From the NCBI RefSeq assembly GCF_006345805.1, contig NC_042999.1:140802001-140866000 (forward strand): a DNA stretch of 64,000 nt, given 5' to 3'. The stretch's first letter is position 1, and every line of letters begins with the position of its first letter. The notes under the pieces are model-generated. The model worked only from the letters and a program-made list of their open reading frames with translations, was not told the origin of the DNA and did no database searches. The position numbers were made by a program, and so were the translations under genes. Shown here in pieces: positions 31,126 through 61,760 of the stretch. The stretch is from Octopus sinensis (taxonomy: Eukaryota).

Positions 31126-31128
<3 letters not shown>
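30965..31128 (+). mobile_element. Second R4/Dong-type fragment (pre-CCHC region)
   Basis: WNWLKKETLKKESQGTVLAT*DQAL...SSLCCICNRVDETI; cut off at the (TA)n array. Confidence 0.7.
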
Positions 31129-31182
<54 letters not shown>

Positions 31183-31185
<3 letters not shown>

Positions 31186-32341: not shown

Positions 32342-32347
32342 ATATAG

Positions 32348-32630: not shown

Positions 32631-32699
32631 AAATATATATATTTATATTGTATATAAATATATATATTTATATGGAGAGGATTGACCTGTAAGAGTCCT

Positions 32700-32990: not shown

Positions 32991-33009
32991 TGATGCATAT
33001 ATATATATA

Positions 33010-34822: not shown

Positions 34823-34862
<40 letters not shown>

Positions 34863-34939
34863 GAGAAAACACTGTTAGGAAAAAAAACAGTTAAATATAA
34901 CAAAATGAATGCTAGTCTATAGTTCACAGCTAAAACTCT

Positions 34940-39312: not shown

Positions 39313-39362
<50 letters not shown>

Positions 39363-39551
39363 ATTCAGTTGAATTAGGTACTTAAGTTGAGGCACTAAGT
39401 CAGTCTGGTATTATCTGCACAGCTCAAAGTAAGGTGAATAAAAAGCAAATAAGTAACAAGGATGTCAAAGTATTTGTACATTGCGGCACTAATACCTTGA
39501 TATCCTTGTTACTTATTATCTTTAAAGCCAGGAATTTTTCAGCCTCCCCTC

Positions 39552-39618
39552 ATGTGTGTGTGTGTGTGTATATATATATATACATACATGTATGTATATA
39601 TATATATATACATACATG

Positions 39619-39664
<46 letters not shown>

Positions 39665-39762
39665 TACATATATATATACATATATACACATACATGTGTA
39701 TATATATATATACACACACACACACATACATACATATATATATACATATATACACATACATG

Positions 39763-39798
<36 letters not shown>

Positions 39799-39800
39799 AA
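39552..39800. repeat. Compound (TA)/(CA)/(TG) microsatellite with an internal ~65-bp duplication
   Basis: The block (ta)n-(ca)n-tacatatatatatacatatatacacatacatg occurs twice in tandem. Confidence 0.85.
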
Positions 39801-41804
39801 CGCACAAATAGATAATACACTCAACCCCTACAACTTCTCTCCTCATTGCCCTTATCATAATAACTCTTCCTTACTAATCACCTGAAATTACCTTCCTCTC
39901 CCACACCCATTACTTCCTTCCATCTTATCTTTCCTTCATGTATCACTTTACTCATCCATGTAATAACCTGGGGTACCACTATATCTCTTTCTACTCACAC
40001 ACTACCATATTACTTTTCACTTCCCTCCAGTTACCCCATTTCCTAAAAATGTTCCCATTATCAACAATAAACTTGCTTGATTCCAATATAAATTATCTTG
40101 GAACTTAAGGGACCATCCTTCCCATGCTGGCATGGCAGGTGGACTGACCCATCCTATCACTGAGCCAACCTACTCAACTTACACCATTATTATTATCATA
40201 TAGTTTTCTTCCCCCTCTCCTTCATAATAACCTTAATTTCACATTTCTATCTTTCTCTTCTAATCACATCCCTACACTATTCCTTTTCTTATTCTCTACA
40301 TTACCATCCTACCACTATAAATTAGTTCCTTTCCAACATGGGGTGCTCTCTTTTGCTTCGTAAGCTACAAGGTGAATCCAGTAGCGCGTGTACCAAAAAA
40401 ACCCACCCACTATACTCTGGTAATTGATCCAAACAGTGGCAATGCAGGGCTTGAGAGGGTTTTTTTAGTCTTTCTGTTGCCAAGACAAACTTCTACTGTG
40501 TTAGTGCAACAGAAAATGCTCCCAGTTTACTTTGGAAAGTGGTTGATATTAGGAAGGGCATCCAACTTCAAAAACCATGCCAAAGATGAGACAATACAGG
40601 AAGATATGATCCTCCAACCCAGTGGTTGCTGTTAAACTGTTCTACTCATGCCAGTATAAAAAGCAAATAAAAAATGATATCATGATAATTATCATGATAC
40701 ACACACACACACACATATAGTTAGGTGCTGGCATGGATGTTATGGTTATGAAGTTTGCTTTCTTGCTTTCCAACTACATAGTTTCAGTTTCAGTCTCACT
40801 GCGCCTTCAGCAAGTGTTTCCTATTGGGCCAACCAAAACCATGTGAGTGGATTTGATAGACAGAAATTACATATGTATATGTATGCGTGTATCCATGCAT
40901 GTACGTCTTTGGGTTTGTTTACTTATATTGCTTGTATGAATGTGTAATGTGATCAGTTTCAACTGTCAACAAATCATCTTAGCACTTCTTGCCTTTGAAG
41001 CCATGTGGAAGAGATCTATTACTGGAAAAACAGATAAGGTCTGTGTCAGGAAGGGCAACTGCTTCTAAAACTGCTTCAAATAATGCATTCATCCAACTCA
41101 TGTAAGCATGGGCAACTGGACATAAAGCAAGCAAATTATGCATATAATTATTCATTTTTCATTCATTTGTATGTGTTTCTCTATGTCAGCATGGTTAGAT
41201 GAATATATTATTAAAACATTATTTCATATTTAGATGCCCTTCATATGTGTAAATCAAATGAAGAGTACATTTCTCTTGAGATCTGTCAAGAGTTTTTTTT
41301 TACAGCTTTAGTTTTAGAAGCATTACCAGATAGTTTCCTTTCAAAAGACATTGCACATTGATTTGTAATTAGTTTAAAATCCTAGCTTCATCTCAGCATG
41401 TTATACTGCATTTTAGAACATGAATAAATATGTCTGTTCAGGTAACTATATTGCAATTTTGACAAATTTAGTTTTCTAATTTCCAGTTAAGAATTGTAAA
41501 ATGCTGCTTCTTAATGCATAATTCTCTGTTATCTTTGGTTCTTTTTTGAAATTTTTCTTCAATTCACGTGTCAGCTTTTAAAGTAATTTCACATTTCCTC
41601 TCTGCAATGCTGCTATTTGAAATATTTAAATATTTAAATATGCAAGAACATTACAAATTGCAGCTAACATCCTATTTAATTTTTTTAAACAAAGAAATTA
41701 TTTGAATAAGATATTTCCACCTGCTTAAAAACTAAATAACATATTAAAAATATATGAATTACACACACTCACAGACACATATATGTACATACTCGCATTC
41801 CATT

Positions 41805-41965
41805 GGTCATCACAATGAGGATTCCAGTTGATCTGATCAAGAGAACAGCCTGCTTGTTAAATTAACATGCAAGTGACTGAGTACTCCACAAACATAGATT
41901 CAGCATGACACAGAATGTAACAAGGCTGGCCCTTTGAAATAAAAGTACTACTCATTTTTGCCAAC
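41805..41965 (-). mobile_element. SINE fragment (family 4 variant)
   Basis: Minus strand ttggcaaaaatgagtagtactttt...tttcaaagggccagccttgttac shares ggcaaaa(a)tgagta with 43590-43760. Confidence 0.5.
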
Positions 41966-41970
41966 TTTAT

Positions 41971-42018
<48 letters not shown>

Positions 42019-42415
42019 TGGTGCTCTAGCATAGCCACAGTCAAATGACTGAAACAAGTAAAAATATATTTATATATAATGAGAGTGAAATAATGTTATG
42101 TGCAGCTACTAGGGCATCCAAAATGAGAAAAAAAATAGAATTATATGGAAATATTCTTTCATATGTTCTCTCACTCATAAGAAAAAGACATCACATAATA
42201 ATAAAGCAAAAACAAAAAGAAGGCCTGTGCAGTTCACTCCCCTTAAGAGAAGTTTCTCTCTGCTTCTTACTCTGAAAGCAACCATAGGTGGTAGCACCAA
42301 CAGTTGCTAGTCAAATTTCACATGTATGTGTGTGTATATATATATATATATATAAAGTTTTGAATTAAAAGCAGCTCTTGTAATATAAATATTATTAATC
42401 ATACATACATACAGT

Positions 42416-42864
42416 ATGTGTTTTGTTTATATACTGAATTTGCTGTGGATAACATCCTAGGAATGCTCCTTACACAACACCGGGCTTTAAAGAACACCTG
42501 AATGTCACAGAACAGGTGAAACAACTTACCTTGGAATCACCAAGAACAGTAGAAATCAATATTTTGCCATTATTATGGCTTATCAATACTGTGTACTCAG
42601 ATCATCTTGAAACGAATTGAATCTTTGGTCTATGACTCACATGCAAATAGACCAGAGATCCAATTTGTTTCAAGATGATCCAAGTACATGGTATTGATAA
42701 ATGACAATAATGGCAAAATGTCAATATCTGCCAGTCTTGCAGATTCCGAGGCGAGTTGTCTCACCTGGTACATGACATTCAGGTGTTCTTCAAGATTCAG
42801 TGCTGTGTAGGGAACATTCTCATGATGCTATCCACAGAAAATTCAGCATATAAACAAAACACAT
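42416..42864. repeat. 449-bp fold-back (palindromic MITE-like) element
   Basis: Arms 42416-42633 and 42647-42864 (218 bp each) align as reverse complements without gaps, about 44 mismatches by hand count, around a 13-nt loop. Confidence 0.95.
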
Positions 42865-43589
42865 TCTTTTTACATGCCAGTGGCACATAAAAAGCATCCA
42901 CAACACTCTTTGAGTGATTGGCATTAGAAAGGGCATCCAGCTGTAGAAACCATACCAAATCAGATTGGAACCTGGTGCAGCTCCCCAGCTTACCAATTTT
43001 CAGTCAAACCATCCAATCCATGCCATCATGAAAAATGCATGTTAAATGATGATGATGAGGAGGATACGTTAAGTTTTGTCATCAATAAATCACATAGTTT
43101 CAGGTTCAATCTAACTGTATGGCACCTTGGACAAGCGTCTTCTATAGCCCTATGGTGACCAAAGTCTTGTGAGTGGATTTGGTAGGCCAAAACTAAAAAA
43201 AAGCCCACCCCTTCCCCTACTAGATGTGAATAGCCATGCAGATCCTCTACATGAATCTGTACTGCCCCACCCTCCGACTCATAATTCTAGTCTCTTGTCC
43301 ACCAGCATAAAGCTGACCTCTACCCACCAAGGTTTGTAATTCTGTGAGCTGCCTGGCAACCTCAGTAGTGCAGTTGATACAGAAAAGCATCCAGTCCATA
43401 CTGAAAAGTGGTTGGCATTAGGAAGAATATCCAGACATAGAAACCACACCAAACAGATATTGAAGTACAACACAGACCTTGGCCACATTGGATCCAGTCA
43501 AACCATCCAACTCTAACATTGAACATGGACATTAAATGAAGATGATGATGTATATATATGCGCGCACACACACACATAAGGTCTTTTCT

Positions 43590-43760
43590 GAGTCATAGGC
43601 TTATGAAGCTGGTTTCCCAGATTATGTAGTGTATATATTCCCACCTGGACAGGATGCCAGTCTATTGCAAGATTACTCATTTTGCCAGCTGAGTGGACTG
43701 GAGAAATGTGAAATGAAGTGTGCTTTGCTCAAGAACAGAATGCATCACTCAGTCCAGGTG
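43590..43760 (-). mobile_element. SINE fragment (family 4, V-SINE-like 3' part)
   Basis: Minus strand ttcttgagcaaagcacacttc...ccagtccactcagctggcaaaatgagt...gactggcatcctgtccagg. Confidence 0.55.
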
Positions 43761-43965
43761 ATTATATATATATATATGTGTACAACTGTGTATGTGTACT
43801 GGTGTGCATTGACATCAAGTAAAACCTATATGAAATGTTACTACAAAACTTAAGATCATATCTATATCGTTTATAGAAATACATAAATCTGGAGGAGAAG
43901 CACACTCTTAGATATAGAGCCGTTAATATTATAGTGGGGTAGGCTGGTTTATAGGGTATATAAGG

Positions 43966-44500
43966 TGCAAGCATGGCTGTGTGGTAAGAAACTTGCTTCC
44001 CAACCACAAGGTTTCAGGTTGAACTCTTCTGCATGACACCTTGGGCAAGTGTTTTCTATTATAGCCTTGGGCCAACCAAAGCCTTGTGAGTGGATTTGGT
44101 AAATGGAAACTGAAAGCCCATTGTATATACATATATATACAATGGGCTTTTTTATATATCTATATATATATAATGGCGTTAGGAAGGGCATCCAGCCGTA
44201 GAAACATTGCCAGATCAGACTGGGCCTGGTGCAGCCTTCTGGCTTCCCAGACCCCAGTTGAATCATCCAACCCATGCCAGCATGGAAAGTGGACACTAAT
44301 CGATGATGATGATGATGATGTATGTGTCTTTATGTCTGTGTTTGCCCTCCATCACTGCTTGACAACCCATAAGTTAGTGGTTCAGCAAAAGAGACCAATT
44401 GAATGAGTACTAGGATTTAAAAAAATTAAGTTCTGGAGTTGATTTGTTCAACTTCAAGGGAGTGCTCCAGTATGGCCACAGTCAAATGACTGAAACAAGT
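43966..44500 (+). mobile_element. Family-1 SINE interrupted by a nested RTE 3' end
   Basis: SINE head 43966-44125, RTE tail about 44175-44320 ending (GAT)n, then the SINE 3' half resumes to gtgctccagtatggccacagtc. Confidence 0.8.
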
Positions 44501-44576
44501 AAAAGAATAAAATAAAAATAAAAGAATACACATACACACATACATATATCATATATATATATATAAATATAAAAAT

Positions 44577-44630
<54 letters not shown>

Positions 44631-47242
44631 TATATATATATAGATAGTCAAAGACTTATTGGGTGTCTTGAAGAAATGTTTAGTCTAGTACTTCCTTAAA
44701 CAATGACAAACATTTAATTTACTTATTTGCTTCATGTCATATTTTGTGAACAACACCATTCTTAGTTACATGTTTCCAATAGGCTAATTATTGGTTCTTT
44801 GCATTTATAATGGAAAGAGGGACAAGGGACTGTCTGTGAAAACCAGGTGAAACAACTATCACAAGGAAATTTATTTGAAAGTAATGGCTTATTGGCTTCT
44901 AACTGATCTGTACATTTTTCACTGATATGCATTGCTGAATGATATACACATGTATATATATACAATGAACTTTCACACAGTTTCTGTGTCTACCAAATTC
45001 TATTCAAACAGCACTGGTCAACCTAATATATTTAATTGTTCAATATATTTGTTCACTGTACAACACAGTGGAATCAAACCCAAAACTACTTGGTGGCAAC
45101 GCAAATTTCTTAATCATACAGCCATACCTGCACATTCACAAACATACTCCAGTGGTAAGTAAAGTCCAATATGTAATTATTTTAGATAGAAATTTTGAGG
45201 TGGCTTCATTTATCTTAATATTCTGATATACCAATTACAAAATGATAAATTTTTGTCAAAACGGCAATGGTGGTGGAAGAGTAGATGGAGGAGAAGAAGG
45301 AGGTGGTGTTGATAATGGTTATAATGCTACTGCTGCTGCTGCTGATAATCTATTAGAAATCTTAAACCTAGTACCGCAAGTTAACAAAACATTCATCAGT
45401 TATGCAATGCTCATACTGCCAATAACAACAATTAGCTGTATAACTCTGTAATACTTAGTTACAGCTAGCTAGGCTGAATTACTTCAGTAACTTTACCAAT
45501 AGTATGAAAGAGTACCAGTGGTGTAACATACCATAGCCATAAATTTATACTTCTTTGAGCACAAGCTTATGACCCACTTGACTTGGTTGGTTATAACTTT
45601 CATATCACAAGAAAACTGGGGTAAAAAGCATGTGTGTGTGTGTGTGTGTGCACGCATGTATGTGCGTTTGTAAGTGCATGTAATATGCTAGTATATATAA
45701 TACTTTTAAGATGAAATATACTTTACATTTGGAGATTTTAAAGCTAGATACTATCTGTTGATGACAACTTAACAAAGTAAAACAGTGAAATACATTTTTC
45801 CTTCCTGATCCTGTATCAACTATCAAGTCTCTTAAAAGAGATATAGAAAATAGTTAAACAATGTTCATCTGTATTGGGATGAACAGAGTATTTTATTGAA
45901 TACAAAATTAAAATCTAAAATTAGTCATAAGATACCTTCATGAACAGAGCAGACAAATAAACAATATAATACTTTATAGTTAAACAGAATTTTTTTTCAC
46001 TCTGGAAATGAAAGAAAGAATAAAGTCACATTGTTTCTTTCTTCATAACAGCACTTTCTGGCTACAATTTGCCTAAAAATCTCAAATCTACTTGGAATGA
46101 TGCCAGCCAAAGTAAAGTCAATGTAATATGAAATAATAGTTCATTTCAAGAAAAATGAACAGAATAAACATGTAATGTTCTGGAAAGTAGTTCAGTATGT
46201 TTGTGAGCCAGTATTGGAAGCAACAAGCTGAAGCATTTTGTTGGCCAAGAGCATAAATCTGTAAAAAGATGAGATTAATATCATAGACATGTCTTTGGCA
46301 ATGGGATAGATCACTGGCAATAGAAGAGATCACAGAAAATACTTTAGGAAAAAGACTGTGTTAGCCAGTTATCAAGATAGTTCCAGAAACCTTAACCCCA
46401 ATCATAAAATACCCATTTACAATGGGTTTAAGGTTGGTCAAACTATTACAGGCACATTAAGATTTAACCAAATGCTTCACATACATAAGTTTGATCAGAA
46501 GAAATTCTCTGAAAGATATAAAATAATCTCATGAAAAATTAAAAAGTTTTTAATTGTTTTGTTAGATACCTGAATATCCGAGTAATTTGTTAGTACCAGC
46601 ATTGGTACACTGCATAAGATTTGAACTGGACTATTATTTGCCAAATGTATTTTGTTTTAGCTTTATAAATTACTAGAATGAATTTTATTACTATCAGATT
46701 ATGGTACAAAGCCTCTGAGCAAATGAACTTCAGTCTAAACCGCAGTATAATGTAAAATAAGTACTGACATATATGATTTAGTGAGTTAAGAAATTTGAAT
46801 AAAAATGACAAACTTAGTGAAGAAAATTTTCATATTTTTGGCTCTTCCCTTTTTTTATGTCCAATACATAGCATTCTCAAAATACTTTCAATGCAACAAG
46901 CAGGACTTTTTTTTTTATCAATTTAGACCCTGCCATATGGTCATGGTATCGCTTTGTTATTGTAATCTTACTTCAGAACCTGAGATCTTCCTTCAAATTC
47001 AGCTTTCACCTTCCAGTTATTAGCTCTATCTTAAAGTTTGGGTTTCAGCTTTCATTTGTTTATACTTCTGTGTTCTCCCTTAATTTCCTTTTTACCAGCT
47101 TAAATTGATAAGCAAGTTCAGTAATTATGTAGTGGCTCCCTTATTTTAAAACTATGACGATGACGGCGATGGTGATGATGATGGCAATGATGATGATAGT
47201 GATAATAATGATGATGCTGATGACCCAAAATATAATACACAC

Positions 47243-47340
47243 ACACAGGTCTACATCAAGTGCCTGGAGGAGGTAGTGCTGCCCTGAGTCAAGAGGGTGG
47301 CTCCTGGCAACAGGACTTAGCACTGTACCACACAAGCAGT
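47243..47340 (+). mobile_element. maT/DD37D-like mariner transposase relic
   Basis: YIKCLEEVVLP*VKRVA, then WQQDLALYHTS (cf. WQQDSAPxHTS). Confidence 0.65.
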
Positions 47341-48409
47341 ACTATGCCACACAAGTCTTGCTAAAACCAGTGACCCAACACCGTTGCTGGTGATATTACT
47401 TATGTTACCATTTCACAGAACCAATACTGCCATCACCGTTACTATAACCACCTTTATCCACTTCATCATGTGCCAAACTCTCAGTTCTCCATTACCATCA
47501 TCATCATCACAGTCTCCTACACCATCAGGTCAATATCACTATCACCACCATCACAGTACTATTCTTTTCTACTCTAGGCACATGGCCCGAAAATTTGGGG
47601 GAGGAGGCCAGTTGATTAGATCGACCCTAGTATGCAACTGGTACTTAATTTATTGACTCCAAAAGGATGAAAGGAAAAGTCAACCATGGCAGAATTTGAA
47701 CTCACATATGAAATATTGCTAAGCATTTCACCTGCCAACTTGGTTAGCATTTATTCTGCTTTTATCAATGAGATCATTATCGTTTAATGTCCATCTTCAT
47801 GCTAGCATGGGTGGAACATTTTAGCCAAATGGTGCGCAGCTCAGACATAGTTTGGTGAGCATGTCAAGGATTCTTTATTTTGATCACGCTTGAAGAAATA
47901 ATTGTTTGGTTATATTTAGGAATATTGTTGACAAAATTCCTGCTTTCATTGAATTCTGTTGCTACTATTCCTAGAGTTTTCTAGAAATTTTTCACTGGCC
48001 TCCTACTGAGCTCATAGGAAAGCACCTACTGCAGTACCAAGTACAAACAAATACAATCTAAAGAGGTGTGCAGTTAATATTAGGTTGTTAAATTATGTTA
48101 TACAGGTGGGGGGGGGGTCCTAAATGGGTAAATCTAATGGGGTCCACAAATGGAGGTATGTTGGCTGAAAATTTAGGCCCAGATTGAAATGAAGCTAATT
48201 AAAACAAGCTAACCCATGGTGTAGAAAGTTCAGTTTAGTAAAATTAGTTGCAAGTACAGCCTTTGCTGACATGGCGGGTACATGGTCTCATAGAAGACTC
48301 CACTAGAGTGGACGCAAGCGCTAATATATGATTTATAAAAACATGTGACATATTAATAAATATCTGTAAATATAAAACCACCCAGATTTTTGAGTACCTT
48401 ATTTCTCCT

Positions 48410-48432
48410 AATATATATACATATACACATAC

Positions 48433-48465
<33 letters not shown>

Positions 48466-48577
48466 CACACACATATATATACATATATATATATATATAC
48501 ATATGTTTATGTATGTATATATATATATATTATATATATATATATATACATATGTTTATGTATACATATGTTTATGT

Positions 48578-48629
<52 letters not shown>

Positions 48630-48655
48630 GTTTATGTATACATATATGTTTATGT

Positions 48656-48705
<50 letters not shown>

Positions 48706-48749
48706 GTTTATGTATACATATATGTTTATGTATACATATATGTTTATGT

Positions 48750-48795
<46 letters not shown>

Positions 48796-48920
48796 GTTTA
48801 TGAATACATATATATATATATATACATATATACATACATATGTATATACATACATATGTATATATATACATATGTATATATATCAATATAAATACATATA
48901 TATTTATTTATTTATATACA
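48410..48920. repeat. Compound (TA)n array with repeated catatgtttatgtata units
   Basis: About nine 16-18 bp units interleaved with (TA)n runs. Confidence 0.9.
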
Positions 48921-49839
48921 CATATATATCTGTGTGTGTGTCTGTGTTTGGTTCCCACCACCACTTGACAAATTGGTGCTGGTGTGTTTATGTTGCTGTA
49001 ACTTAGTGGTTCAGCAAAAAAAGACCAACAGATAAGTACCAGGCTTTAAAATAGAAAATAAGTACAAAGATTGATTCAATTAAAACTAAAATTCTTCAAG
49101 GTGGTGCCCCTCCATAGTTGCAAGAATTAAAAGCTTAAAAGGTGTCAAAGAATTATTATAAAATACATTGAAATAAAGATAGTAAAGTATTTTTACAATT
49201 GAAAGAATTAAAGTAGCAAATCAGGACAATTCCAAGCATGTGTATATGATATTGTGTGTGAATACGTGCACACACACTCATACATACACTTATGTACATA
49301 CAAATACAAATTTTTGCAATAAAGATACAATAATAGAAAATTGTATGTATTGAATTTGTATGTGCAAGATGAAGAAAGTATGTTCTATCTGCATCAAACA
49401 GAATATTAAGTACAAAACCAGAATATACAGATGAATACTACATATAGTAACTTTCATTTCTGCCGAATTAGCCAATATTACTTTAAATTCAGCAAGCTAA
49501 ATTTATGTTTAAAAAGATATATAATACATATTATGATTCTCATCACTATCATTGTCATTTTAACATCCACTTTTCCATGCTTACATGGGTTAGATGGAAT
49601 TCATTCAAGCAATACGTACACACATATAAACATACGTTATATACATATATTCTAATACAAACACACACATATTAACCAATAGCTATAATCATTTGCTGTA
49701 ATTAGAAGACCAGTGTATGTTATTCTTTGTTAGAGATATATAATCTTGGAAAAGCAAACAAATTAAACACCTGAGCAAAAACCAAAGTCTTAGTAAGTAG
49801 GAAGGCAGACAAATCATAAATCACTTCTGGTAGATGGCC

Positions 49840-51045
49840 CTACTTGATCTGGAGAAAAGATGTGGGTAGAAACTCCATAAGATGTACACGGTGTAAGCTA
49901 TGGACAAACAAGAGGTGCAACAATATCAGAGGAAGGTTAACAGGGAAAATAGCTTTTGTGTGTGGAAGATGTACAGGCACAATAAACACTGAAAATGTAC
50001 AGAAAATAGACTCCATTAATTGCCAGAGGGCAATAAGCCAGAGGTAGTAGATAGCTTCTGTCATCTAGGTGACCAAGTTAGTAGCTGAGGTGGGTGCTCC
50101 AAGAGTGTAGCTGTGATAATAAGATTAGGCTGGCAAAGTTCAGAGAGCTCCTACCTCTGCTGGCAACAAAGGGTCTCTCTCTCAGAGTAAAAGGTAGATT
50201 GTATGATGCCTTTGTGCAAAAAGCCATGCTATATGGCAGTGAAACATGGGCTGTGACAGCCAAGGACATGTGTATGCCAGTATGCTTCAGTGGATGTGCA
50301 ATGTCAGTGTGCTTGTTCGACAGAGCGTAAGCATCTTGAGAGAAAAGTTGGGCATAAAAAGCATCAGATGTGATGTGCAAGAGAAATGAATGCACATGGC
50401 CATGTGACGTGTATGGACAAGGACAGCTGTGAAGAAGTGTCAAACTCTAACAGTGGAGGGAAACTGTAGAAGAGGTAGACTCAGGAAGTTATGGGACAAG
50501 GTGGTGAAGTATGATCTTCAAACTTTGAGCCTCACAGAGGCAATGAATAGTGACTGAGACCTTTGGCAATACACTGTGCTTGAGAAGACTTGTCAAGCCA
50601 AGTGAAATCATAGTCATGGCTAATGCTGGTGTCACGTAACTGGCAACCATGCCAGTGGTACATAAAAAGCACTTTTTGAGCATTGGGCCTCACGGACACA
50701 AAGAGGCTGATGCCAGTGGCACATGAAAAGCTCCTTTCAAATGTTGGGCCTCGCAGAGTCAATGACTGAGACCTTTGGTATTATGTCATGCTTGAGAAGA
50801 AGATCCATCAAGCCAAGTAAAATTGCAGTTGTGATAGATACTGGTGTCATGTAAATGGCACCCATGCCGGTGGTACGTAAAAGTACCCATTACACTCTTG
50901 GAGTGGTTGGAATTAGGAAGGGCATCCAGCCATAGAAAACATGCCAAATCAGACTGGAGTCTGGTGTAGCTTCCCAGCCCTGTCAAACTGTCCAACTGGT
51001 GTCAGCATAGACAATGGACACTAAATGATAATGATGATGATGATT
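49840..51045 (+). mobile_element. 5'-truncated RTE LINE (Cys finger, RT C-terminus and 3' UTR)
   Basis: RKDVGRNSIRCTRCKLWTNKRC...FVCGRC, EVVDSFCHLGDQ, KFRELLPLLATKGLSLRVKGRLYDA, MLYGSETWAV and DLQTLSLTEAM; duplicated 3' UTR units and a (GAT)n tail. Confidence 0.92.
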
Positions 51046-51959
51046 TCTAAACACAGTGAATTTATTGATATGTATTTTTTTTTTATTCTTATTGAAAAAC
51101 TAATTTTAAAACTTCAAAAACAAGCTTGTATTTTGGCTAAAATTTCTTTTCTATGTAACCCTCCAATAGTACAGTTTATTGTTGAAAGCAGCAGGACACT
51201 ACATTATAGGCAACTGTTTCATTAGATTACAGCAGAGGTCTCAAATGCTACTCTAGGCTTGAAAGTTATAATAAATCAACAGTGTATATTTCATATCTAA
51301 GTAAGACATTTTTGATTTTGTCTCAGCTTACCTCATTGAAGAATAAGTACCAAGCCTTCAAGGAAGAAGTAACCTATAATGGACTAACTTATTAAACAGG
51401 ATGAAATTTGCTTCTGATTTTCTCAATACTACATAAACTGAATTTAAGCAATGGCTGGCTTCTATTGTTGATGTTCTTGTTTTGCTCCAAGCCAGTTTTG
51501 ATCAATCACATTTATGATTAAAGACATTCAAACCATAACCACCCAGTCATTCCTTTTTGAATATTTTCACACATAGTATACATAAAACTAAATTAACCAA
51601 TGCAAACTTTCTTTTTTGAGATGGTAGGATAAAAATCTGAGATTTGGTTGCTATTTCTAGTAGGTTAGATGATCATATAGAGTCTTTCTGGATGACACAT
51701 CCTGTTTTTGTTCATCATGTTGCTCATCATTTATGGTTGTTTAAATATTTTTGGAGGCAGTGAGTGACATAAAGATACAATTTACAGAAAATTCAAAACT
51801 TTAATCTCATCTTTAAGAGATCAACTTTAATTTTTCCCAGTTTTAGACAAATGCATTTAAAGAGAAAGCATATTAGATCTAGTAATATCAGATCTATAAC
51901 TTCTGCTTTCTTTGGGAATATTCAGAAGACTAGTGTGTATGAAGGATATAATGCAACAA

Positions 51960-52200
51960 GTACAACACAGTACAAACACAGTGATTGGATTCATCAAAGA
52001 AACAACATTCTAAAACCACTGACTGGCAGAACTAGGTGACAGGATAAAATTACAATTATAGTAATCTACAAAGCATTTGGTAAGCCAATTCCCAACTACG
52101 CTATGTATAGGATCCACAAGCCTAAGACAAGAAGAGGAGAAAACTTTAGTCTACTGTGCAACTGTCTCTGCCAACAAACTACTGTTCTGCATACAGGGGA
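51960..52200 (+). mobile_element. Old LINE RT C-terminal relic
   Basis: RNNILKPLTGRT...IYKAFGKPIPNYA resembles the RNNILKALAG...YKA...NYA motif of AP-endonuclease LINEs. Confidence 0.5.
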
Positions 52201-52534
52201 AAACTATTTTGACAACTGTAACTGATACCTGACTGCGACAAATATCAAATACTGACAATAAATAGGAATCAACTTTTAAATTTACCTTTTTCTCACTAAT
52301 AGACTAATATCTTCTGAAGCATTATGGTGGAAACTTTTACAATAATCATCTGAACCAGAGTGTTGAGTGTCTTCCACAATAAGTTAAAATCCAAGTACCA
52401 AAGCTTATAATTTGCAGAAAGAGACCTTGTGAGACCTCTGATAACAGGTTGCTGTCGACTCTCACAGAATCAACCAGAACAAGTAAGAGCAAGAGCTCTG
52501 AGAAGTAAAATGATGATGATGATGATTTGAAACA

Positions 52535-52780
52535 AGAAGAATTTGGAGTATGAAAACTGTAAAGGTTGTGCCTATAATAATTAGTGCATTGGGAACTATA
52601 ATCAAAGATATAGACAAATGGCTGAATGAGATGGGAGTAGAATGTCCTGTAGAGCTTCCACAGAAAGTTTGCTTCTCAGGCACAGAAAAGAATATCAGGA
52701 GAGTTCTAAGCACTTGAAAGATTATTGAAAGGTTGTAAATACCTAAGGTTACAGATAGTAACCTACTACCCATATAAATC
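52535..52780 (+). mobile_element. R4/Dong-clade retrotransposon extreme C-terminus
   Basis: RRIWSMKTVKVVPIIISALGTIIKDIDKWLNEMGVECPVELPQKVCFSGTEKNIRRVLST*. Confidence 0.8.
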
Positions 52781-53055
52781 CTACCAGAAATAAGACTGAA
52801 TCTGAGTCAAATCAATAACACAAAAGAAGGAGGAGCAGCAGCAGTAACTTATTGTCCACAGTGCTAAGGTGCTCTACATTATAATTTGTTATAACAGGTA
52901 TATTAAATTAAGCTGTGGTCGTGGTTATGAAAATTATGAGTGCTACAAAGGATACAGTATATCATAAATGAAATTGTATGGTATGAATAATAGAGTAAAT
53001 GTTTAATATTGTAATTATTAAGGCGAGTGAGTATATGTTTAATATTGGAATTATT

Positions 53056-53250
53056 AAGGTGGTGAGCTGGCAGAATCGTTAGCACACCAGACGAAATGCT
53101 TAGCAGTATTTCATCTGCCACTACATTCTGAATTCAAATTCCGCCGAGGTTGACTTTGCCTTTCACCCTTTTCAGGGTTGATTAAATAAGTACCAGTTAT
53201 GCACTTGGGTCAATGTAATCGACTTAATCCCTTTGTCTGTCCTTGTTTGT
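53056..53250 (+). mobile_element. tRNA-derived SINE (family 2)
   Basis: aaggtggtgagctggcagaatcg...ctgaattcaaattccgccgaggttgactttgcctttcacccttttcagggttgattaaataagtacc. Confidence 0.88.
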
Positions 53251-55869
53251 GATCATGTACTGCACATCATAATCATCGTTTAATGTCTGTCTTCCATGCT
53301 GGCATGTGCTGGACAGTTTGACAGGAGCTGGCTAGGCAGAAGCCTGCACCAGAGAATTTTATTATTGCATCATTACTATTGAGATGTAGCTATGCATTTA
53401 TACATATATGATGATGTGTATGTATGTACATACACACATATAAATATGATATATATATATATATTAGTTTGTTTAGTGTCCATTTTTCCATGCTGGCATG
53501 GGTTTGACAGGGATATGTTTTTTTTAAGTAGGTAAACATATCACTATTTCACTTAGTGAAGCTGAGGGATGTCAATATATGTGTTGCTCTCTATCTCACA
53601 GACATACACACATGCACACGATGGCTCCTCTACAGCTCCAGTATACCAAGTTCATTCACAAGGTGTTGTTCAACTCAGGGCTGTCATACAAGACACTTGA
53701 CTGAGGTAATGTGCAGCGAGATTGAATTCAAAACTATATGATTACAAAGCAAACTTCTTAACCACATAGTAATGCTTCTGTTTACACACACACATGCACA
53801 CCTTAACTTGTTCTTCGCTTTTAGTCTTTGAGTCTCATCCAAGTTTTGCCCTCTCACAATACTATGAATGCACAATGTTTTAGTTGCAATGCAAGCAATT
53901 CTGAATTTAAATGGAAACAAAACTAGTCAGTAGCTCTAACACTTTCTTGAAATTAATCCTCCAGACTTTTCTAAACACTTTATCTTTTGCATAAACTTTT
54001 TTAGATTACCTTGGAAACATCTAGGATTATTTCTATCGAATTTCTTCAGTTTCATCTAATTCTAAATTAAAAACTCTATTTAGCAAGTAACTCATGACAC
54101 ATTTTGAAAACAGCTAAACTCTTAGTAGCTATTTAAAGTAGATTAACAGCTGCTGTTATCCATTTCTCATGTTTGCTCCCAAGAAAACCAAGTTAATGTG
54201 TTTGACATTAGTGAAACAGTCACAAATAACTGTCAAAAGAAGGAGTATTTTAACTTTCTCCAACTGTAATTGTAAAAGAACAAGCAGGATTTATTCTCTT
54301 TGGGTGACTATCTAATGTCAAGCAAGAAAAGAGCCTGATATGAAGAATATCTGAAGAAGCCTGCGAAAAGATGATAATGATAATAAATTATTAAACTCAT
54401 ATAAAACTTTTGAGTTAGAAGGAAGAAAAATGAGTAATCAATAAAGCCAAATCTTTCAAAATGGCTTTAGTGTTGTAATTGTTATGTAAATATATTTATA
54501 TCTAATTGTATTGTGTGTATATATAATAAAATGTAAGCAAATGTTTACTGTTTAATTGTAGGTTACAAAATGTTCTATAATTTTTTTTTTAAATTACAAA
54601 ATATTTTAAAACATTATACAGAAAGCTATAGTTATTCCATTAGAATAATTCATTGAAATTATGCAGATAGTCATGTTATTGATTTTAAAAAAATATGCAT
54701 TAGTGTACATTATCAAGAAGCTTATTGTTTAAGGAAATCTAAATAAAGACAACCATTTCTTTTTTTCGTTTTTTTACCTGTATCTAATATTTATTTATGG
54801 ATAGCTTGTAAAAGAAATGTACATCAAAGGATGTAGTTGCAGTCTAGACTATTCACAGTTCTTCTAATCACTGCTGTCATTGCATGTCCTAGGCCTTACT
54901 AAATGTTACCAGGTTATATCGAAATCGAAAAAATAGAATAAAACAAGACATGAGTATTGATTACATTCAGACCTTTACAGGCACAGACACTGAATGCTTT
55001 CTATTCATAGAAAAAGTTATTTAGTATTCACTAACAGTTCTCTATGACACTGCCATATCATATGTAACTATTGTGAAGCTATTTTTTTCTTTTTCTGTAA
55101 TTTGTATTTTTTTTTATAGTTCTCATTCAACATTGGATTCTGAGGGAAAAGAAATGAAAAAGATGTAAAAGAAATTTTTATTAAGAGTATAAGTAAAAAA
55201 AAAATGTATCTGATAAAATAGGTAAGAAGATAGAAAATAGTAGAATCTTTTTCTTTTTTTTGTATTTTTATAAATTAGCTTTTAAGATTAAAAAAGAATT
55301 AAATTAATTTTCCATAGAGGATTTTTAGCAAAACAGGTTAGATCTGGAATCATGAATACTTCAGTAAATAAATAATGATAACACAAGTATGATTGATTTA
55401 AGTAAAATATATACTTATCTCTTCTCTAGGCTAAAAGCAATTGCATATACTGACATGTGTGCATGTGTGTGTGCATGTATGTATGATACATACAAGCACA
55501 TACCCCCACCCACCCCCACACACACACAGTTATCAATACGCATACACATTTTACTTTGCAGCTATTGAACAATTAGTTACAAGTTTCCAGCAGACTAATC
55601 ACTGGCTCTCAGCATATTTGATGGTCAGAGTGACAAAGGGTTGTCTCATATTTTGGAACCAATAGCACAGAGAGCATCTTTTAAATTTAAGTGTGCTCGT
55701 CTCTTAGTTTCCTTTCTGATGCTTATTGCTTTATAATGTCAAGCGGTAATGTAAACAAATGATTTGAATTTGGTATGATTTCTATATCTTCTATCTCACT
55801 TATTAGTTTTACTTCTCTTTGACAAGGGAATAAAAAAATCTAACCAATATTAGATGCCCTTCTACTGCT

Positions 55870-56050
55870 TCCATCCAGTTTATAAATTTTCATTGTACAC
55901 ATTCCTTTATCCAAATCACAATCAGTCTTTTTTTTCCCTATCTTCTACATTCATTTCCATCACTCCTCTCATCCAGAATCTTTCATTCTTTCTAAGCACA
56001 TGACTTAACCATCTCATCCCATTTCTGGTTCTATTCCCATAATTCCCTGC
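55870..56050 (-). mobile_element. Old RTE-like ORF C-terminal relic
   Basis: Minus strand MRWLSHVLRKNERFWMRGVMEMNVE resembles LRWFGHVxR...M.V.G. Confidence 0.45.
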
Positions 56051-57550
56051 AGTTCACAGTTTGTCATCTTTCCAATGGCAATGTAGGAATTGTGATTGTG
56101 ATTTATGCAGATGGTACAAGAAGAAAAGATATAAGTTTAATCTGTTGGATGTGCAACATTAACTTTCATAAAAAGATGCAAATGACCTGACATCAACAGA
56201 CTCATGCAGGAGAAACAATTCTGCAGGTATGAAGATGTATGCTGAGTGAAAATTGCCATGTGCAATAAAAATGTACCAATAGCAAAAGGGCAACAAAATT
56301 GGCACAGGAAAAATAGAAGTTAGTTTTGATCTCAGGAAGTTCAGTTTTACAGATCAGATGGGACAAGACAAGAGGAGTGGTTATGAGCAATACTTCAAAA
56401 TGGTTACTCCCATACTGACATACAAAAACAGTCATTAAAATGATGATGATGATGATGATAGCTAACAAGTATAAACAAAATGAAATAGCTGCAATAGAGA
56501 ATCAAATATAGGTTCTCTAATGAAATGTGGATTGTGAATCTATTCCATAGAGCTTACCAGTATTACAGAGCCATCACCTGCAGAATGTAAATGTATCTGA
56601 CTATAGATTGTGATAGGTTCTGTTCATAAAATGCTACTGATATGCACAATTTATAGAATTACAAACAAAAAGTAAGTTTTTCAGAAGCAACTGTTACAAA
56701 TCTAAAAACCTTTCACGTTTTATTTTTGTATTAATGTTAAAATTTGTTCAGAACTTGCTTGATTGCTTAAGTGGAAATAAACTTCAACATTTTACACCTA
56801 CTAGATAAACATTTCTCAGAGGAATGCAATACATACAGAATTTGTAGTTATATAACCTACAGAAATTCACTTTTACCAACAATTTTATTAAATGGTCCAA
56901 ATACTTTCCTGTCAATAGGTCTTCCTTTGGACACTGCCCTAACTACATTCAAAGAGATCAATGAATATAAGTATTTTAAATAAACTACAATAGAAATAAT
57001 AGCTGGGATATCATTAATAGTAAAGATGCATTGATTAATGAACCAACAATACTGAATGAAATACATTCAGTCACAAGGAAATATAAAATTTATGGCAAAT
57101 CAGTTCAGATTAGGGTTAAGAAGAAACTGTTGTTCAGGTGAATAATAATTTTAGCAATTTACTAGAATGGTATTACAGCAACTAATTCAAGAATAGTTTA
57201 CAATCTTTCCCACAAGTCACAGAAAGTGATTAATGGTAAGTTTCTCCACATGGAATGTTCAACATGGCATAAGGCCAAGAATCATACTTTGTAAATACCA
57301 TCCCAGATGAGGAAGGGAAGTGAAATCCATGGCAATTCTTTCAGAATGCTTCAACATGAAATTTATATGAAATGGGCATCTTTAAAAAAACTTAGTTTAG
57401 AAAGAGAAAATATTGAAAGTTTATTTGATCTCTTACTTTGTGTCTTTCTCCTTCTGTCTCACTCTCTCTCCACTCTCTTTCTCTGTCAGAGACAAAGTTG
57501 GTATTTATGACTTTGGAAAAGCTATATGCAAAAGGAAGCAGGAACCTAAA

Positions 57551-57755
57551 CAAGATAGCAGTTTGCACACATGCATCATACAATTTACTTTTCACTCTGA
57601 GTAAGAGGCCCTTTGTCACCAGTAGGGGTAGAAGCTTTCTGAACTTTGTCCAGGCTATTCTTATTCTGTTGGTAACACTTTCTGAGCATCCACCCCAACT
57701 ACAGACTTGGTCACCTAGGTAGCAGAAGCTATCAACTACTTCTAGTTTCTCCCCT
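57551..57755 (-). mobile_element. RTE LINE internal fragment
   Basis: GEKLEVVDSFCYLGDQVCSWGGCSESVTNRIRIAWTKFRKLLPLLVTKGLLLRVKSKLYDACVQTAIL; same family as 49840. Confidence 0.9.
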
Positions 57756-57784
57756 TGGCATGTGATGGAATCATGAAAACTAAC

Positions 57785-58240
57785 TGATTTGGAGGACTGT
57801 CATTGATGAACTTCTTGATATGACTGGTGCGTCCTGGAGCTCCTGCCAATGAATTTTAAGCAAAGAATTGTGAATGAGAAGAGTTACAGCAAAATTTGCA
57901 CCTCGATTGCTCATGTAAGATCAAAAGCAGTCATGACTGGATGTGTGTCAAGAACTGGAAGAAGAGTTGGAAGATGATCCAGACCTATTTTTAAAGGTCA
58001 TCACTGGTAACAAAAGCTGGTGCTATGGAATTTGCAGATATGGAAGAGGTGAAAAAAAAATGACAGAGGCATTAAAAGGAATCAGTCCAAGCACTGCTTC
58101 GAATAGTGGAAAATGCGCCTGAATTGATGCATTGCTTCAAATGGAGAATATTTTGCAGGCGATAAAAGTGTAAACATGTAAAACTACATGAATAAAATAA
58201 TATTGCAAAATTCCAGTTTCTTTTGGGTACCCCCTTCTAT
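57785..58240 (+). mobile_element. Internally deleted mariner (DD34D-type) with 3' TIR
   Basis: MRRVTAKFAPRLL...DPDLFLKVITGNKSWCY joined to FADMEEVKKK...CIASNGEYFAGDK; ends aattccagtttcttttgggtaccccct. Confidence 0.85.
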
Positions 58241-58327
58241 ATATATATTGATTCTCAGTCTTATGGTTAAGATCAAGGTCTAATATTTACTCTTAACAGT
58301 TTTATATATATATATATATATATATAT

Positions 58328-59230
58328 ACTTGCTGGTGCACCCGATAATTCCCAGGGATAAAGATGTTCTATTGAAATGCTTTATTACTCTGATATAAGA
58401 AAGCAATTTTGTTACAACTACCATAGAAAGTGTATTTTCCACGAAAAAATACAAAAAAGGAGGAAGGGATTGTTGGAGGTTGGTGAGAGAGGTTTTCAGA
58501 GGTTGGCGAGAAAGATTGTCGGAGGTTGGTGAGAGAGGTTGTTGGAGGTTGGCGAGAGGCAAAGACATTATTCTGCTTAGCAAAGGCATCTGGGAAATGT
58601 ATAACTGCTGTCATTCACAGAAAAACTATTGTTTTACCATGAGAAAAGCACTGTTAAATAGTCAAGTGAAATTTGGCAATTGAGGATCGAATCCACGCTA
58701 AGCCTGCATGAAGCCACTACAAATATGTTGTGGAATAAAAAATGTATCTACTGTCATGGAAAAAGTGTAAATGCAGAATTATCATAGTAATGGGCATTCA
58801 AAAAAGTATGTATGTATAGAAATGTATAATCTTTAATGTTTAAGATTCAAATTAAGGAAGTGCAATAATAATGTTTAGCAGCTCAAAACTGTGAGTAGTG
58901 AAATGCAGAATTAGGTCAGCTGATTGTGAGAATCAAATATTGATCGTTTCGCTAAAATCTGCAGGTGGTATGGGTTATTTCCCTTGGGTTGTTTAAATAA
59001 AATATTAGTAATATGTAGTAGATAGAAGGATCCATTGGAAAGGGCCTATTATCAATTTTTTTCAACAATCTAAGTATGTCACGAGGTTTCCAGACTCACG
59101 TGTCAAATAAAGTATAAAAGTGATATTGTCTGCAAAAATTAGAAATAGGACACAAAAAATCAATATTCAAAGTAATCGAACATAATCAATCAAATTTCCC
59201 TTGAATGTTTAAAAGAAATATCGTACAGGT
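58328..59230 (+). mobile_element. Unclassified non-autonomous element (possibly Helentron-like) with a 23-bp minisatellite
   Basis: Begins after (TA)n with cttgctggtgcacccgataattcccaggg and contains four 23-bp units at 58470-58561. Classification is tentative. Confidence 0.4.
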
Positions 59231-61307
59231 GCCATGGGTTCTAATTAGAAATTATCTGAACATGGAAATAATTGTAGGTTATAAGAAATGAATGTTATTT
59301 GAAACTGGAGTTGTGTTAATAAATTGATGTCTATCTATCAATTTCTCCATTTTCTTTTCTTTTCTTATACATCCATATAAGAAGAAAAGAAAATGGAGGT
59401 TAGGAAGTAAATAAATTGTTTATTATTAACAGCAAATTGGTCATCTTCACTTACAGCCAATTAATACTCAATAAACATTAAATTTACATTTATGGGACAT
59501 GAGCACAATATCATCAGAGGAAAAAAGATGTATATTTGGATTTATATGTGTGCTTATGAATTCATTTTAAAAGTGAGAATTTGGCAGCAAGAGCACTAGA
59601 ATTGAATATTTAAAAAATCCTAGATTGTTGCACCAGAATTCAAGTCACCAAAATATCAATCTAGTTTTTCATTCATTCACTGATACTTAAGTAGTAGGAA
59701 TTATATTTGACAGAGTGTCATATATGCCTACCGTTTAGTAATAGCTAGTGAAAATAGCCTTCAAATTTGTCTCTAGTTACATGTTGATCACTTTTCTAAA
59801 TGTTATGCAAAGTATTAACTTCAAAAAATTCACTGATATATTTTCTCAGGATTTGTAATCACTTGATATTATAAACTATTTGAAATCTTTATCCAAATAG
59901 AAGGGTGAAGAGTTAATTCAAACTATTAAATTGATGCCTTTTAATCTTGCTAACAAGATGAAAACATTAAAAATATTGATAAAAAAAGTAAGAGTTTTTA
60001 TATGTAGAGAGAAAACATGAGTCATTGATATTATTATATGTGTAATAACAAACGCTGAAAATTGTTATGTTTAACATATATAATAATCACAAAATCTTGA
60101 CAAACTGCTGTAAGTTTCAAGGTTAACCAAAGCTTTTGTTGCAGTGTGTCTCCAGCCATGAACGTCTGCTAGTAGAACTTTAATATATTGACTTCAAATT
60201 TATGGCTTAAAGAATATGTGGTCTCCATGGTAGTAGGAAGTTATGAATGAAATTTAACAGGCTACACTGAGAAGGACAAGCAACTAAACAAAATACCAAC
60301 TCTAATTCTATCTTAAATGATTTTCATTACATGCTAGAATATATAAATATACGAAATAAGAAAACTAACAAAGGAGAGATGAACTCCATGACTGGTGGCA
60401 GGTAGCTCATAAGGAGATTCAAAATATCATTTCTAATTCCATCAGGTTTACAAATAAAATTTATAAAGTTTTAAAACTTGGTTAAACATAATTGGAAAAT
60501 AGATAGAATTCAGTTACAAATATAGTTAAATATTACTCAAATAGAACTATCAACGACAGAAATCAATAGAAAAATAAATTCATAGAAATAAAGATGTTTC
60601 AAATGAAATGGAGAAATTGATTCAGGTATTTCCTTCTTTTTTTTTTTCTTTTCAATTTTTCTTTTAAAAATGCAAAAAAAAAAAGCTTTTTTGTTTTTTT
60701 ACTTTATGTTTAGATCATGAAAATCATGGGATATTGAATATTTCAAAAAATTATGAGTATTATGATAATGCAATATAAATGTAAGAGAGTGAAATGAGGA
60801 AAATGTATACATCACCCTTTCTTGCCAGACTCCATCTTGCTGTTTAGTGCACTTTGTAAACTCCAATAATGCAAAGGTGTTTCCAGCAAAAATGAATAGT
60901 GATGGCTTTGACTCCCAACCCAGACAACCAAATCTAACCCTCAAAAAAATCATGCAATATACAGAAAATACTGGGAACAAAAATTAGTATATGATATTCT
61001 AAAATAAGACAGAAAAAAAACTGAAGAAACAATCAACAAAAAATTTTCCCCCTAAAATCAACTTAATCTGTATCATTAAAATTAAGCCATATAATTTAAA
61101 ATAATTAAAATATAAAGAAAAACATGTATAATACTCTCATATTAAAAAAATAAAATATTTAACATGAAAAAATATAAAGTAACATTTAAATTTATCCCAC
61201 ATTTCTATTTATTGGTTAATATTAACCACAAGCTTTTCTAAACAAATTTCCCAATAATACACACACACAAATACACAAACACACACACGTGTTGCTTTCA
61301 ACATTAA

Positions 61308-61317
61308 GAAAGGATAT
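61308..61317 (-). promoter_or_regulatory. U12-type (AT-AC) 5' splice site ATATCCTTTC
   Basis: Minus strand reads GAA TGG AA|ATATCCTTTCTT: a full minor-class donor consensus at the codon position where Cav1 genes are known to carry an AT-AC intron. There is no usable GT donor at this boundary. Confidence 0.92.
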
Positions 61318-61720
61318 TTCCATTCTACAATCCGTATACAGACTTTCCGGAGTGGGTTTTTTAGGGTCAGACAGAACATCGACCGTGCCGGCCGAATGTT
61401 CTGCTGAGCCTGCTTCCGGATGTTGACCCGTTTCCGGGTCATGTTGGTTACCGTGGTGGCAGCCAGCGCTGTAGCCCAGGCAGAACTGAGGGGTTTGGCA
61501 GGATCGGTCCCGGCTTCAGGGCCAGTAGTGGAACTAGTAGCCCCCTGTTCTTGTGATTGAAGTTGACTAAAGTTTTGCAACGACTGTGACAATGACTGTT
61601 CTCCCACTGCCGTCCGATCTTGGCTGAGTATCCCCCGTGGGGGCCTAGAAAGTGTGTTACTGGTAGCAAAACTACTGCTGCTGCTACAGGCTGCTGTATC
61701 CTTCTCATTATGTGCTGCCC
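61318..61720 (-). CDS. Cav1 (CACNA1C/D-like): Internal coding exon of an L-type voltage-gated calcium channel alpha-1 subunit (Cav1), N-terminal cytoplasmic region
   Basis: Minus strand: acceptor tctttttgcttatttttcag|GG, then 133 uninterrupted codons ([20 protein letters not shown]...[58 protein letters not shown]), then AA| (2+399+2=403 bp). The last ~25 residues match the Cav1 signature [26 protein letters not shown] that precedes IS1. Confidence 0.95.
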
Positions 61721-61760
61721 CTGAAAAATAAGCAAAAAGAATATTGAAACAATCAATTTT
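61721..61760 (-). promoter_or_regulatory. Major-class (U2) 3' splice acceptor and polypyrimidine tract of the upstream intron
   Basis: Minus strand ...tgattgtttcaatattctttttgcttatttttcag immediately precedes the open exon frame. Confidence 0.8.

What the first reader, a model, noticed from the sequence alone, without database searches (positions are those of the whole stretch)
61300..61330. Minor-spliceosome AT-AC donor at the ancestral IVEWK|PFE boundary of an invertebrate Cav1 gene
Seen: the exon ends TGG AA| and continues ATATCCTTTCTT, a full U12 donor, in codon phase 2. Established: vertebrate Cav and Nav alpha subunit genes carry an AT-AC intron at this position before IS1. Inference: this cephalopod-like genome retains the ancient minor intron, so L-type channel output may be rate-limited by the minor spliceosome. 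Read-through gives a misleading WKYPF that gene predictors may absorb into the CDS.
Basis: partly seen in the sequence, partly recalled or inferred. Interest (0 to 1): 0.75.

Follow-up and report, generated by a model that had tools for sequence, protein, structure and literature searches.

The report
Conserved minor-spliceosome donor in Cav1 gene
An N-terminal exon of an L-type calcium-channel gene ends in a perfect minor-spliceosome (U12, AT-AC type) splice donor at the position just before the first membrane segment, which is real but is the already documented ancient intron shared by nearly all animal calcium and sodium channel genes.

Summary
On the minus strand, a 403-nt exon (61720..61318) encodes the N-terminal cytoplasmic part of a Cav1 (L-type) alpha-1 subunit. 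It ends ...ATT GTA GAA TGG AA|ATATCCTTTC. This is a 9/9 match to the U12 donor consensus, in phase 2, at the residue where human Cav1.2 and Cav1.3 end "IVEWK".

Relatives support it. Six further independent lineages (a 98% and an 86% relative, two land snails' worth of data, a horseshoe crab, two unnamed invertebrates) carry [A/G]TATCCTTT at the same base. Sequence identity collapses right after it. Where the acceptor could be read, it has a TCCTTAAC-type branch site 9-13 nt before AC (or AG when the donor is GT).

One part is missing. The acceptor of this gene is not in the window. No IS1 exon lies in the 61.3 kb downstream, so the intron is at least 61.3 kb and only its donor half is shown.

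The finding is not new. Published work already describes this "D1S1" U12 AT-AC site as conserved from choanoflagellates and snails to humans. The idea that the minor spliceosome limits channel output here is untested analogy with rat Cacna1c.

The parts
61318..61720 (-). Cav1 N-terminal coding exon, 403 nt. It enters in phase 1 (xGG), has 133 full codons (AAHNEKD...CIRIVEW), and leaves in phase 2 (AA|).
   Evidence: Open frame. It matches Cav1.3, Cav1.2 and Cav1.1 N-termini with E 1e-8 to 3e-7, ending at IVEWK. Identity to L008 is 83.9% without gaps, against 41-49% in the flanks. In the conserved half, 15 codons differ synonymously only and 1 non-synonymously.
61309..61317 (-). U12-type AT-AC 5' splice site, ATATCCTTT (followed by C).
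   Evidence: Exact match to the published consensus ATATCCTTT (PMC6259924, Fig. 6 legend). It is conserved 9/9 in L002 and L008, and as [A/G]TATCCTTT in L001, L006, L009 and L011 at the same base.
1..61317 (-). 5' part of the minor intron. It is at least 61,317 nt; the acceptor and branch site lie beyond the window start.
   Evidence: tblastn with four IS1/IS2 exon versions and a motif scan find no IS1 exon (TIFANCVALA) anywhere in the window. The only two TCCTTRAC sites (36290, 47863) are not followed by a PFE-coding exon.
61721..61740 (-). Ordinary U2-type 3' splice site of the upstream intron (tctttttgcttatttttcag|GG).
   Evidence: Pyrimidine tract plus CAG. Conservation with L008 starts at the base after AG.
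61440..61490 (-). NSCaTE-type calmodulin-binding motif with downstream Met: [17 protein letters not shown].
   Evidence: It fits LSxxWxxx(I/L)xxxx plus a Met 0-10 residues downstream, as defined for protostome L-type channels in PMC3634016. The same SAW.TALAA block is present in P0003-P0008.
61318..61394 (-). Conserved pre-IS1 segment [25 protein letters not shown](K).
   Evidence: It aligns to human alpha-1D residues 90-126 and alpha-1C residues 73-124.
61250..61290 (-). (GT)n microsatellite inside the intron, 27-67 nt after the donor. It contains the best nearby cryptic GT site, CAC|GTGTGT at 61288.
   Evidence: It differs in length from L002 and is absent from L008.

Best explanation
Window 61309-61317 (minus strand) is the 5' splice site of the ancient U12-dependent ('D1S1') AT-AC intron of a Cav1 (L-type) calcium-channel alpha-1 gene. 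The intron separates the cytoplasmic N-terminus (...CIRIVEWK) from transmembrane segment IS1 (PFE...). Inferred mechanism: U11 snRNP pairs with ATATCCTT, U12 pairs with a TCCTTAAC-type branch site close to a terminal AC that lies more than 61 kb downstream, and splicing joins TGGAA to (A/G)CCNTTYGA to give ...EWK-PFE.... What is shown: the exon, its Cav1 identity, the donor, its positional conservation, and the U12 acceptors of the orthologous intron in relatives. What is inferred: the acceptor in this genome, actual use of the donor in RNA, and any kinetic (rate-limiting) consequence.
For: The donor is a 9/9 match to the consensus, in phase 2, at the IVEWK boundary. The same motif sits at the same base in seven lineages, while everything after about +10 diverges. 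Window against L008: exon 83.9%, donor 100%, next 100 nt 41%. Orthologous introns are complete U12 introns. Candidula L001: ATATCCTTTT...ttccttaacttgttgaAC|A GCA TTT GAA. L011/L012: ATATCCTTTT...cccttaaccgatgtgcAC|A CCG TTC GAG, about 142 nt. L010: tccttaacctaatgtattgcAC|ACCG. L006/L007: GTATCCTTT...ttccttaatccagcttcAG|A CCA TTC GAA. A correctly spliced Bradybaena model reads EYK|AFEIL. Literature: the D1S1 site is U12 AT-AC in almost all Cav and Nav genes, including the snail Lymnaea (PMC6259924, PMC3634016). Rat Cacna1c intron 2 is a minor intron (PMC8767276). Molluscs, with Octopus sinensis included in the survey, retain many minor introns (PMC10639083).
Against: No RNA evidence for this species was available. 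The acceptor and branch site of this gene are not in the window and could not be retrieved from a close relative. The motif RTATCCTTT alone occurs at chance frequency in the window. A moderately good GT site (CAC|GTGTGT, 7/9) lies 29 nt downstream.
Confidence: 0.9

Rival explanations
1. The ATATCCTTT is a chance match, and the exon is really spliced by the major spliceosome from a nearby GT, for example CAC|GTGTGT at 61288, which would add about 10 residues (YPFLMLKAT..).
For: RTATCCTTT occurs 3 times in the window against 2.15 expected. A 7/9 GT site lies 29 nt downstream.
Against: That GT lies in a length-variable (GT)n tract, is absent from the 86% relative L008, and would change the phase. 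The extra residues are not conserved: P0001 reads [10 protein letters not shown] and P0002 reads YPFYISRVMR. The U12 motif is kept at this base in seven lineages.
Confidence: 0.04
2. The exon is a dead fragment or pseudogene, or the frame simply reads through, so no splicing happens here.
For: No further Cav1 exon is found in 61 kb downstream or 2.3 kb upstream. The read-through frame stays open for 36 more codons.
Against: There is strong purifying selection in the conserved half against L008: 15 codons differ synonymously only and 1 non-synonymously, with no indels in 403 nt. Conservation stops at the splice sites. The window is AT-rich and about 12% self-similar dispersed repeat, which together with the absence of other coding sequence fits a very long intron.
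Confidence: 0.03
3. It is an AT-AC intron removed by the major (U2-type) spliceosome, like the 'AT-AC I' class.
For: AT-AC termini alone do not prove U12 dependence. This is established knowledge: Wu & Krainer 1997, cited in PMC2831892.
Against: The donor carries the full U12 box TATCCTTT, not an ATAAGT-like site. Orthologous introns carry TCCTTAAC branch boxes 9-13 nt from the 3' end and no pyrimidine tract.
Confidence: 0.02

Closest known systems
D1S1 U12-type AT-AC intron of four-domain voltage-gated Ca and Na channel genes (Spafford et al. 1999 as cited; Fux et al. 2018, PMC6259924; Taiakina et al. 2013, PMC3634016), including Lymnaea LCav1
   Same: Same position (end of the N-terminus, before IS1), same donor consensus ATATCCTTT, same gene family (Cav1), same phylum-level context (mollusc-like relatives).
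   Different: Only the donor half is visible here. The intron is at least 61 kb, against 0.14-6.6 kb in the relatives read here. The species is not identified.
Rat/human CACNA1C intron 2 (minor intron; PMC8767276)
   Same: Orthologous boundary IVEWK|PFE. The exon alignment ends at residue 124 of alpha-1C. Minor-spliceosome dependence was shown there by U6atac knock-down.
   Different: The functional dependence was measured in rat cardiomyocytes, mostly on intron 13. Nothing was measured for this gene.
U12 GT-AG subtype at the same site (L006/L007 here; Drosophila Ca-alpha1D keeps one GT-AG U12 intron, PMC2831892)
   Same: Same U12 boxes and position in L006/L007.
   Different: Terminal dinucleotides are GT-AG instead of AT-AC. 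Whether the Drosophila intron is at this site was not checked.

Membership tests
U12-type (minor-spliceosome) intron, AT-AC subtype | 5' splice site /ATATCCTT(T) immediately after the exon | tested here: met
   ATATCCTTT at 61317..61309 (-), 9/9.
U12-type (minor-spliceosome) intron, AT-AC subtype | Branch-site box TTCCTTRAC about 10-20 nt upstream of the 3' splice site, with no long pyrimidine tract | not testable with these tools
   The acceptor is outside the window. The feature is met in the orthologous introns of L001, L006/7, L010 and L011/12.
U12-type (minor-spliceosome) intron, AT-AC subtype | 3' terminal dinucleotide AC | not testable with these tools
   Outside the window. AC is seen in L001, L010 and L011/12, and AG in L006/7 where the donor is GT.
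U12-type (minor-spliceosome) intron, AT-AC subtype | Removal depends on U11/U12/U4atac/U6atac (RNA evidence) | not testable with these tools
   No transcript data for this species. Shown for rat Cacna1c in PMC8767276.
U12-type (minor-spliceosome) intron, AT-AC subtype | Positional orthology with a known U12 intron | tested here: met
   The exon alignment ends at IVEWK of alpha-1D residue 126 and alpha-1C residue 124. The D1S1 site is described in PMC6259924 and PMC3634016.
Cav1 (L-type) calcium-channel alpha-1 subunit gene | N-terminus with the NSCaTE motif and the pre-IS1 block (A/S)(L/M)FCLTLKNP(I/L)R..CI.IVEWK | tested here: met
   [13 protein letters not shown] and [23 protein letters not shown]. 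The top PDB matches are all Cav1; Cav2.2 reaches only E 0.48.
Cav1 (L-type) calcium-channel alpha-1 subunit gene | Four six-helix domains with an EEEE selectivity filter, and a C-terminal IQ domain | not testable with these tools
   No further exon of the gene lies in the window.

The most novel reading that the evidence does not exclude
The donor belongs to a minor intron of more than 61 kb, which would be unusually long for a U12 intron. In that case Cav1 expression in this animal's excitable cells would depend on slow minor-spliceosome pairing across a very large, repeat-filled intron, making it a natural control point. The (GT)n tract next to the donor might act as a cryptic-site or modifier element.
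Probability: 0.1. Interest if true: 0.4.

Novelty: already known. Interest (0 to 1): 0.15.

Why it matters
The main value is practical. The site is a dependable landmark for annotating Cav and Nav genes. It is also a known trap: a phase-2 U12 donor translates as K-Y-P, and public models either insert junk residues (Candidula: YPFLNFF) or stop there (Tachypleus: EWKYPL*). Biologically it adds one more lineage to an intron already known to be kept from unicellular relatives of animals to humans. It shows that the intron can grow beyond 61 kb without losing the exact U12 donor. It does not open a new question.

Tried and rejected
- **IS1 exon in the window.** I searched with tblastn (a human-like probe written from memory, then snail and other IS1/IS2 exons, word size 2, E up to 100) and with an FANC/NGWN motif scan. 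Nothing was found.
- **TCCTTRAC sites in the window.** Both sites (36290, 47863) were read; neither precedes a coding exon.
- **Acceptor from the same or a close species.** The IS1-only hits with a 'T-PFE' read-through (P0127, P0130) came from unrelated compact genomes in environmental samples, not from the runs holding the close relatives.
- **P0005 (Bradybaena).** It could not be located on a contig.
- **Organism identification.** The run and assembly accessions occur in no held paper. ARAGORN found no tRNA or tmRNA genes and Rfam gave no match.
- **Wu & Krainer 1999.** The paper is not held, so its content is cited only through papers that cite it.
- **Upstream start-codon exon in 61721-64000.** Comparison with L008 found nothing conserved.

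Full report
**What is in the sequence.** The feature is on the minus strand. Read 5'->3' on that strand, the window shows a pyrimidine tract and CAG (61740..61721), then an open frame from 61720 to 61318. The frame ends ...CGG ATT GTA GAA TGG AA, followed by ATATCCTTTCTTAATG. The exon is 403 nt. It starts with two bases that complete a split codon, has 133 full codons, and ends with two bases (AA) of a Lys codon, so the downstream intron is phase 2. The motif ATATCCTTT occupies 61317..61309.

**Is it more than chance?** The motif RTATCCTTT occurs three times in the window against 2.15 expected, so the motif alone proves nothing. The argument rests on position. The chance of ATATCCTTT at one given base is about 1.6e-5. 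It sits on the base where the protein alignment to Cav1 structures ends: the query's last residue K aligns to residue 126 of alpha-1D and 124 of alpha-1C, "IVEWK".

**What the exon encodes.**
- A 60-residue stretch of its translation, from KPLSSAW to the end, was searched against solved structures. It matches human and rabbit Cav1.3, Cav1.2 and Cav1.1 (E 1e-8 to 3e-7). The best non-L-type hit, Cav2.2, is at E 0.48.
- It contains [17 protein letters not shown] (61490..61440). This fits the NSCaTE calmodulin-binding motif, with its upstream "LS" and downstream Met, described for protostome L-type channels (PMC3634016; coordinates).
- It also contains the pre-IS1 block [23 protein letters not shown].
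- No other Cav1 exon is present in the window, either in the 61.3 kb downstream or in the 2.3 kb upstream.

**Comparative evidence for the donor.** A homology search with the exon returned eight predicted proteins. I fetched genomic DNA for several of them:

| Locus | Source | Relation to the window |
|---|---|---|
| L002-L005 | Logan runs SRR1186938x/9x | 98% protein identity |
| L008 | ERR3431203 | 86% protein identity |
| L001 | land snail Candidula unifasciata | Cav1 homologue |
| L006/L007 | unnamed ENA assembly | Cav1 homologue |
| L009 | horseshoe crab Tachypleus | Cav1 homologue |

. All of these loci have [A/G]TATCCTTT starting at the third base of the same Lys codon, and their sequences are unrelated from about +10 onward.

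In a three-way alignment, window against L008 gives:
- 48.8% identity in the 80 nt before the exon;
- 83.9% across the 403-nt exon, with no gap;
- 9/9 in the donor;
- 41% in the next 100 nt.

In the conserved C-terminal 60 codons, 15 codons differ synonymously only and 1 non-synonymously. The exon is therefore under purifying selection, its 3' limit is TGGAA|, and the first nine intron bases are themselves conserved.

**Comparative evidence for the rest of the intron.** This cannot be checked in the window because the acceptor is not there. It is met in the orthologous introns:

| Locus | Donor | 3' end of the intron and start of the IS1 exon |
|---|---|---|
| L001 (Candidula) | ATATCCTTTT | ttccttaacttgttgaAC\|A GCA TTT GAA |
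| L011/L012 (compact environmental genome, intron about 142 nt) | TGGAA\|ATATCCTTTT | cccttaaccgatgtgcAC\|A CCG TTC GAG |
| L010 | not on the contig | tccttaacctaatgtattgcAC\|A CCG |
| L006/L007 (GT-AG subtype) | GTATCCTTT | ttccttaatccagcttcAG\|A CCA TTC GAA |

. Among short genomic ORFs that cover the IS1 exon, the residue just before PFE is R in 21 cases and T in 2. R is the reading of AG|A/G and T is the reading of AC|A/G. Many of these ORFs also show the translated branch box (FLD, SLT, SLN). This suggests, by inference from translation only, that both U12 subtypes are common at this site. In one insect-like genomic contig (L015) GAATGGAAGCCGTTCGAG is contiguous, so the intron has been lost there.

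**Rival readings.**
- **A nearby GT donor.** The best candidate is CAC|GTGTGT at 61288, 7/9 to MAG|GTRAGT. It lies in a (GT)n tract that varies in length in the 98% relative and is absent in the 86% relative. It would change the phase, and the added residues are not conserved.
- **Read-through or pseudogene.** This conflicts with the selection pattern and with the sharp conservation boundaries.
- **A U2-dependent AT-AC intron.** This does not fit the TATCCTTT box or the branch boxes seen in relatives.
- None of these rivals can be formally excluded without RNA data from this species.

**Gene-prediction trap.** Six of the eight predicted proteins contain K-Y-P after the true exon end. The NCBI Candidula model inserts YPFLNFF by forcing a GT (ttG|GTcctt) and the AG that lies 2 nt past the true AC. 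The Tachypleus model stops at EWKYPL. The Bradybaena model is spliced correctly (EYK|AFEIL).

**Comparison with the literature.**
- Fux et al. 2018 (PMC6259924, section 7 and Fig. [quoted passage not shown] They show it for human, the snail Lymnaea, cnidarians, Trichoplax and a choanoflagellate. They give the consensus as ATATCCTTT / TTCCTTRACYCY.
- Taiakina et al. [quoted passage not shown]
- Rat Cacna1c has minor introns 2 and 13, and U6atac knock-down lowers Cav1.2 protein and L-type current (PMC8767276).
- A survey of minor introns in more than 3000 genomes includes Octopus sinensis and notes that molluscs are relatively rich in minor introns (PMC10639083).
The feature is an orthologous instance of a known thing.

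**What remains inferred.**
- Actual use of the donor in RNA.
- The AC acceptor and branch site in this genome.
- The taxon. The window is AT-rich (about 33% GC) and repeat-laden. It carries at least 11 copies of a SINE-like element that I recall as typical of octopus genomes, but I could not test this.
- Any rate-limiting role of minor splicing for this channel.

**Verdict.** Novelty is low. The only mildly unusual aspect is the intron's size of at least 61.3 kb.

Noticed in passing
window 26359-26698, 33283-33602, 8273-8714, 37466-37656, 42880-43061, 44174-44319, 50856-51041 and others: A dispersed SINE-like repeat family with at least 11 copies, about 12% of the window in self-matches. Its 5' part has 66-70-bp tandem sub-repeats (..CTGGTGGCACGTAAAAAGCACC..) and it ends in a (GAT)n tail. 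This was not tested. ARAGORN finds no tRNA genes and Rfam gives no match.
   Followed up: partly
window 61250-61290 (-): A (GT)n microsatellite starts 27 nt after the U12 donor. Its length differs from the 98% relative L002 and it is absent from L008. It contains the only fair cryptic GT donor nearby.
   Followed up: partly
L001 18684-25246 (Candidula); P0003, P0007: Public gene models mis-handle this intron. The Candidula model inserts YPFLNFF using a forced GT...AG pair, the AG lying 2 nt past the true AC. The Tachypleus model terminates at EWKYPL.
   Followed up: yes
L015 3270-3300: An insect-like genomic contig has GAATGGAAGCCGTTCGAG contiguous. The N-terminus, IS1 and IS2-3 are in one exon that ends ATAGG|gtaaga. 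The D1S1 minor intron and the next intron have been lost in that lineage.
   Followed up: partly
There are 21 R against 2 T, which suggests that the GT-AG subtype predominates at this site in that sample. This was verified at DNA level only for L006, L010 and L011.
   Followed up: partly
window 34000-38000; 35920-36396 (-): A region of strong positive GC skew (0.27-0.43) with ACT/ACC-rich low-complexity sequence that gives a Thr-rich pseudo-ORF. It is probably a degenerate trinucleotide repeat.
   Followed up: no
window 39569-39798 and 48411-48929: Long (TA)n / (ATAT)n microsatellites of 230 and 519 bp.
   Followed up: no
window 38267-38275 and 52947-52955 (-): Two further GTATCCTTT matches lie on the gene's strand inside the intron. 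This is at chance frequency, and no coding exon precedes them in the tblastn scans.
   Followed up: partly
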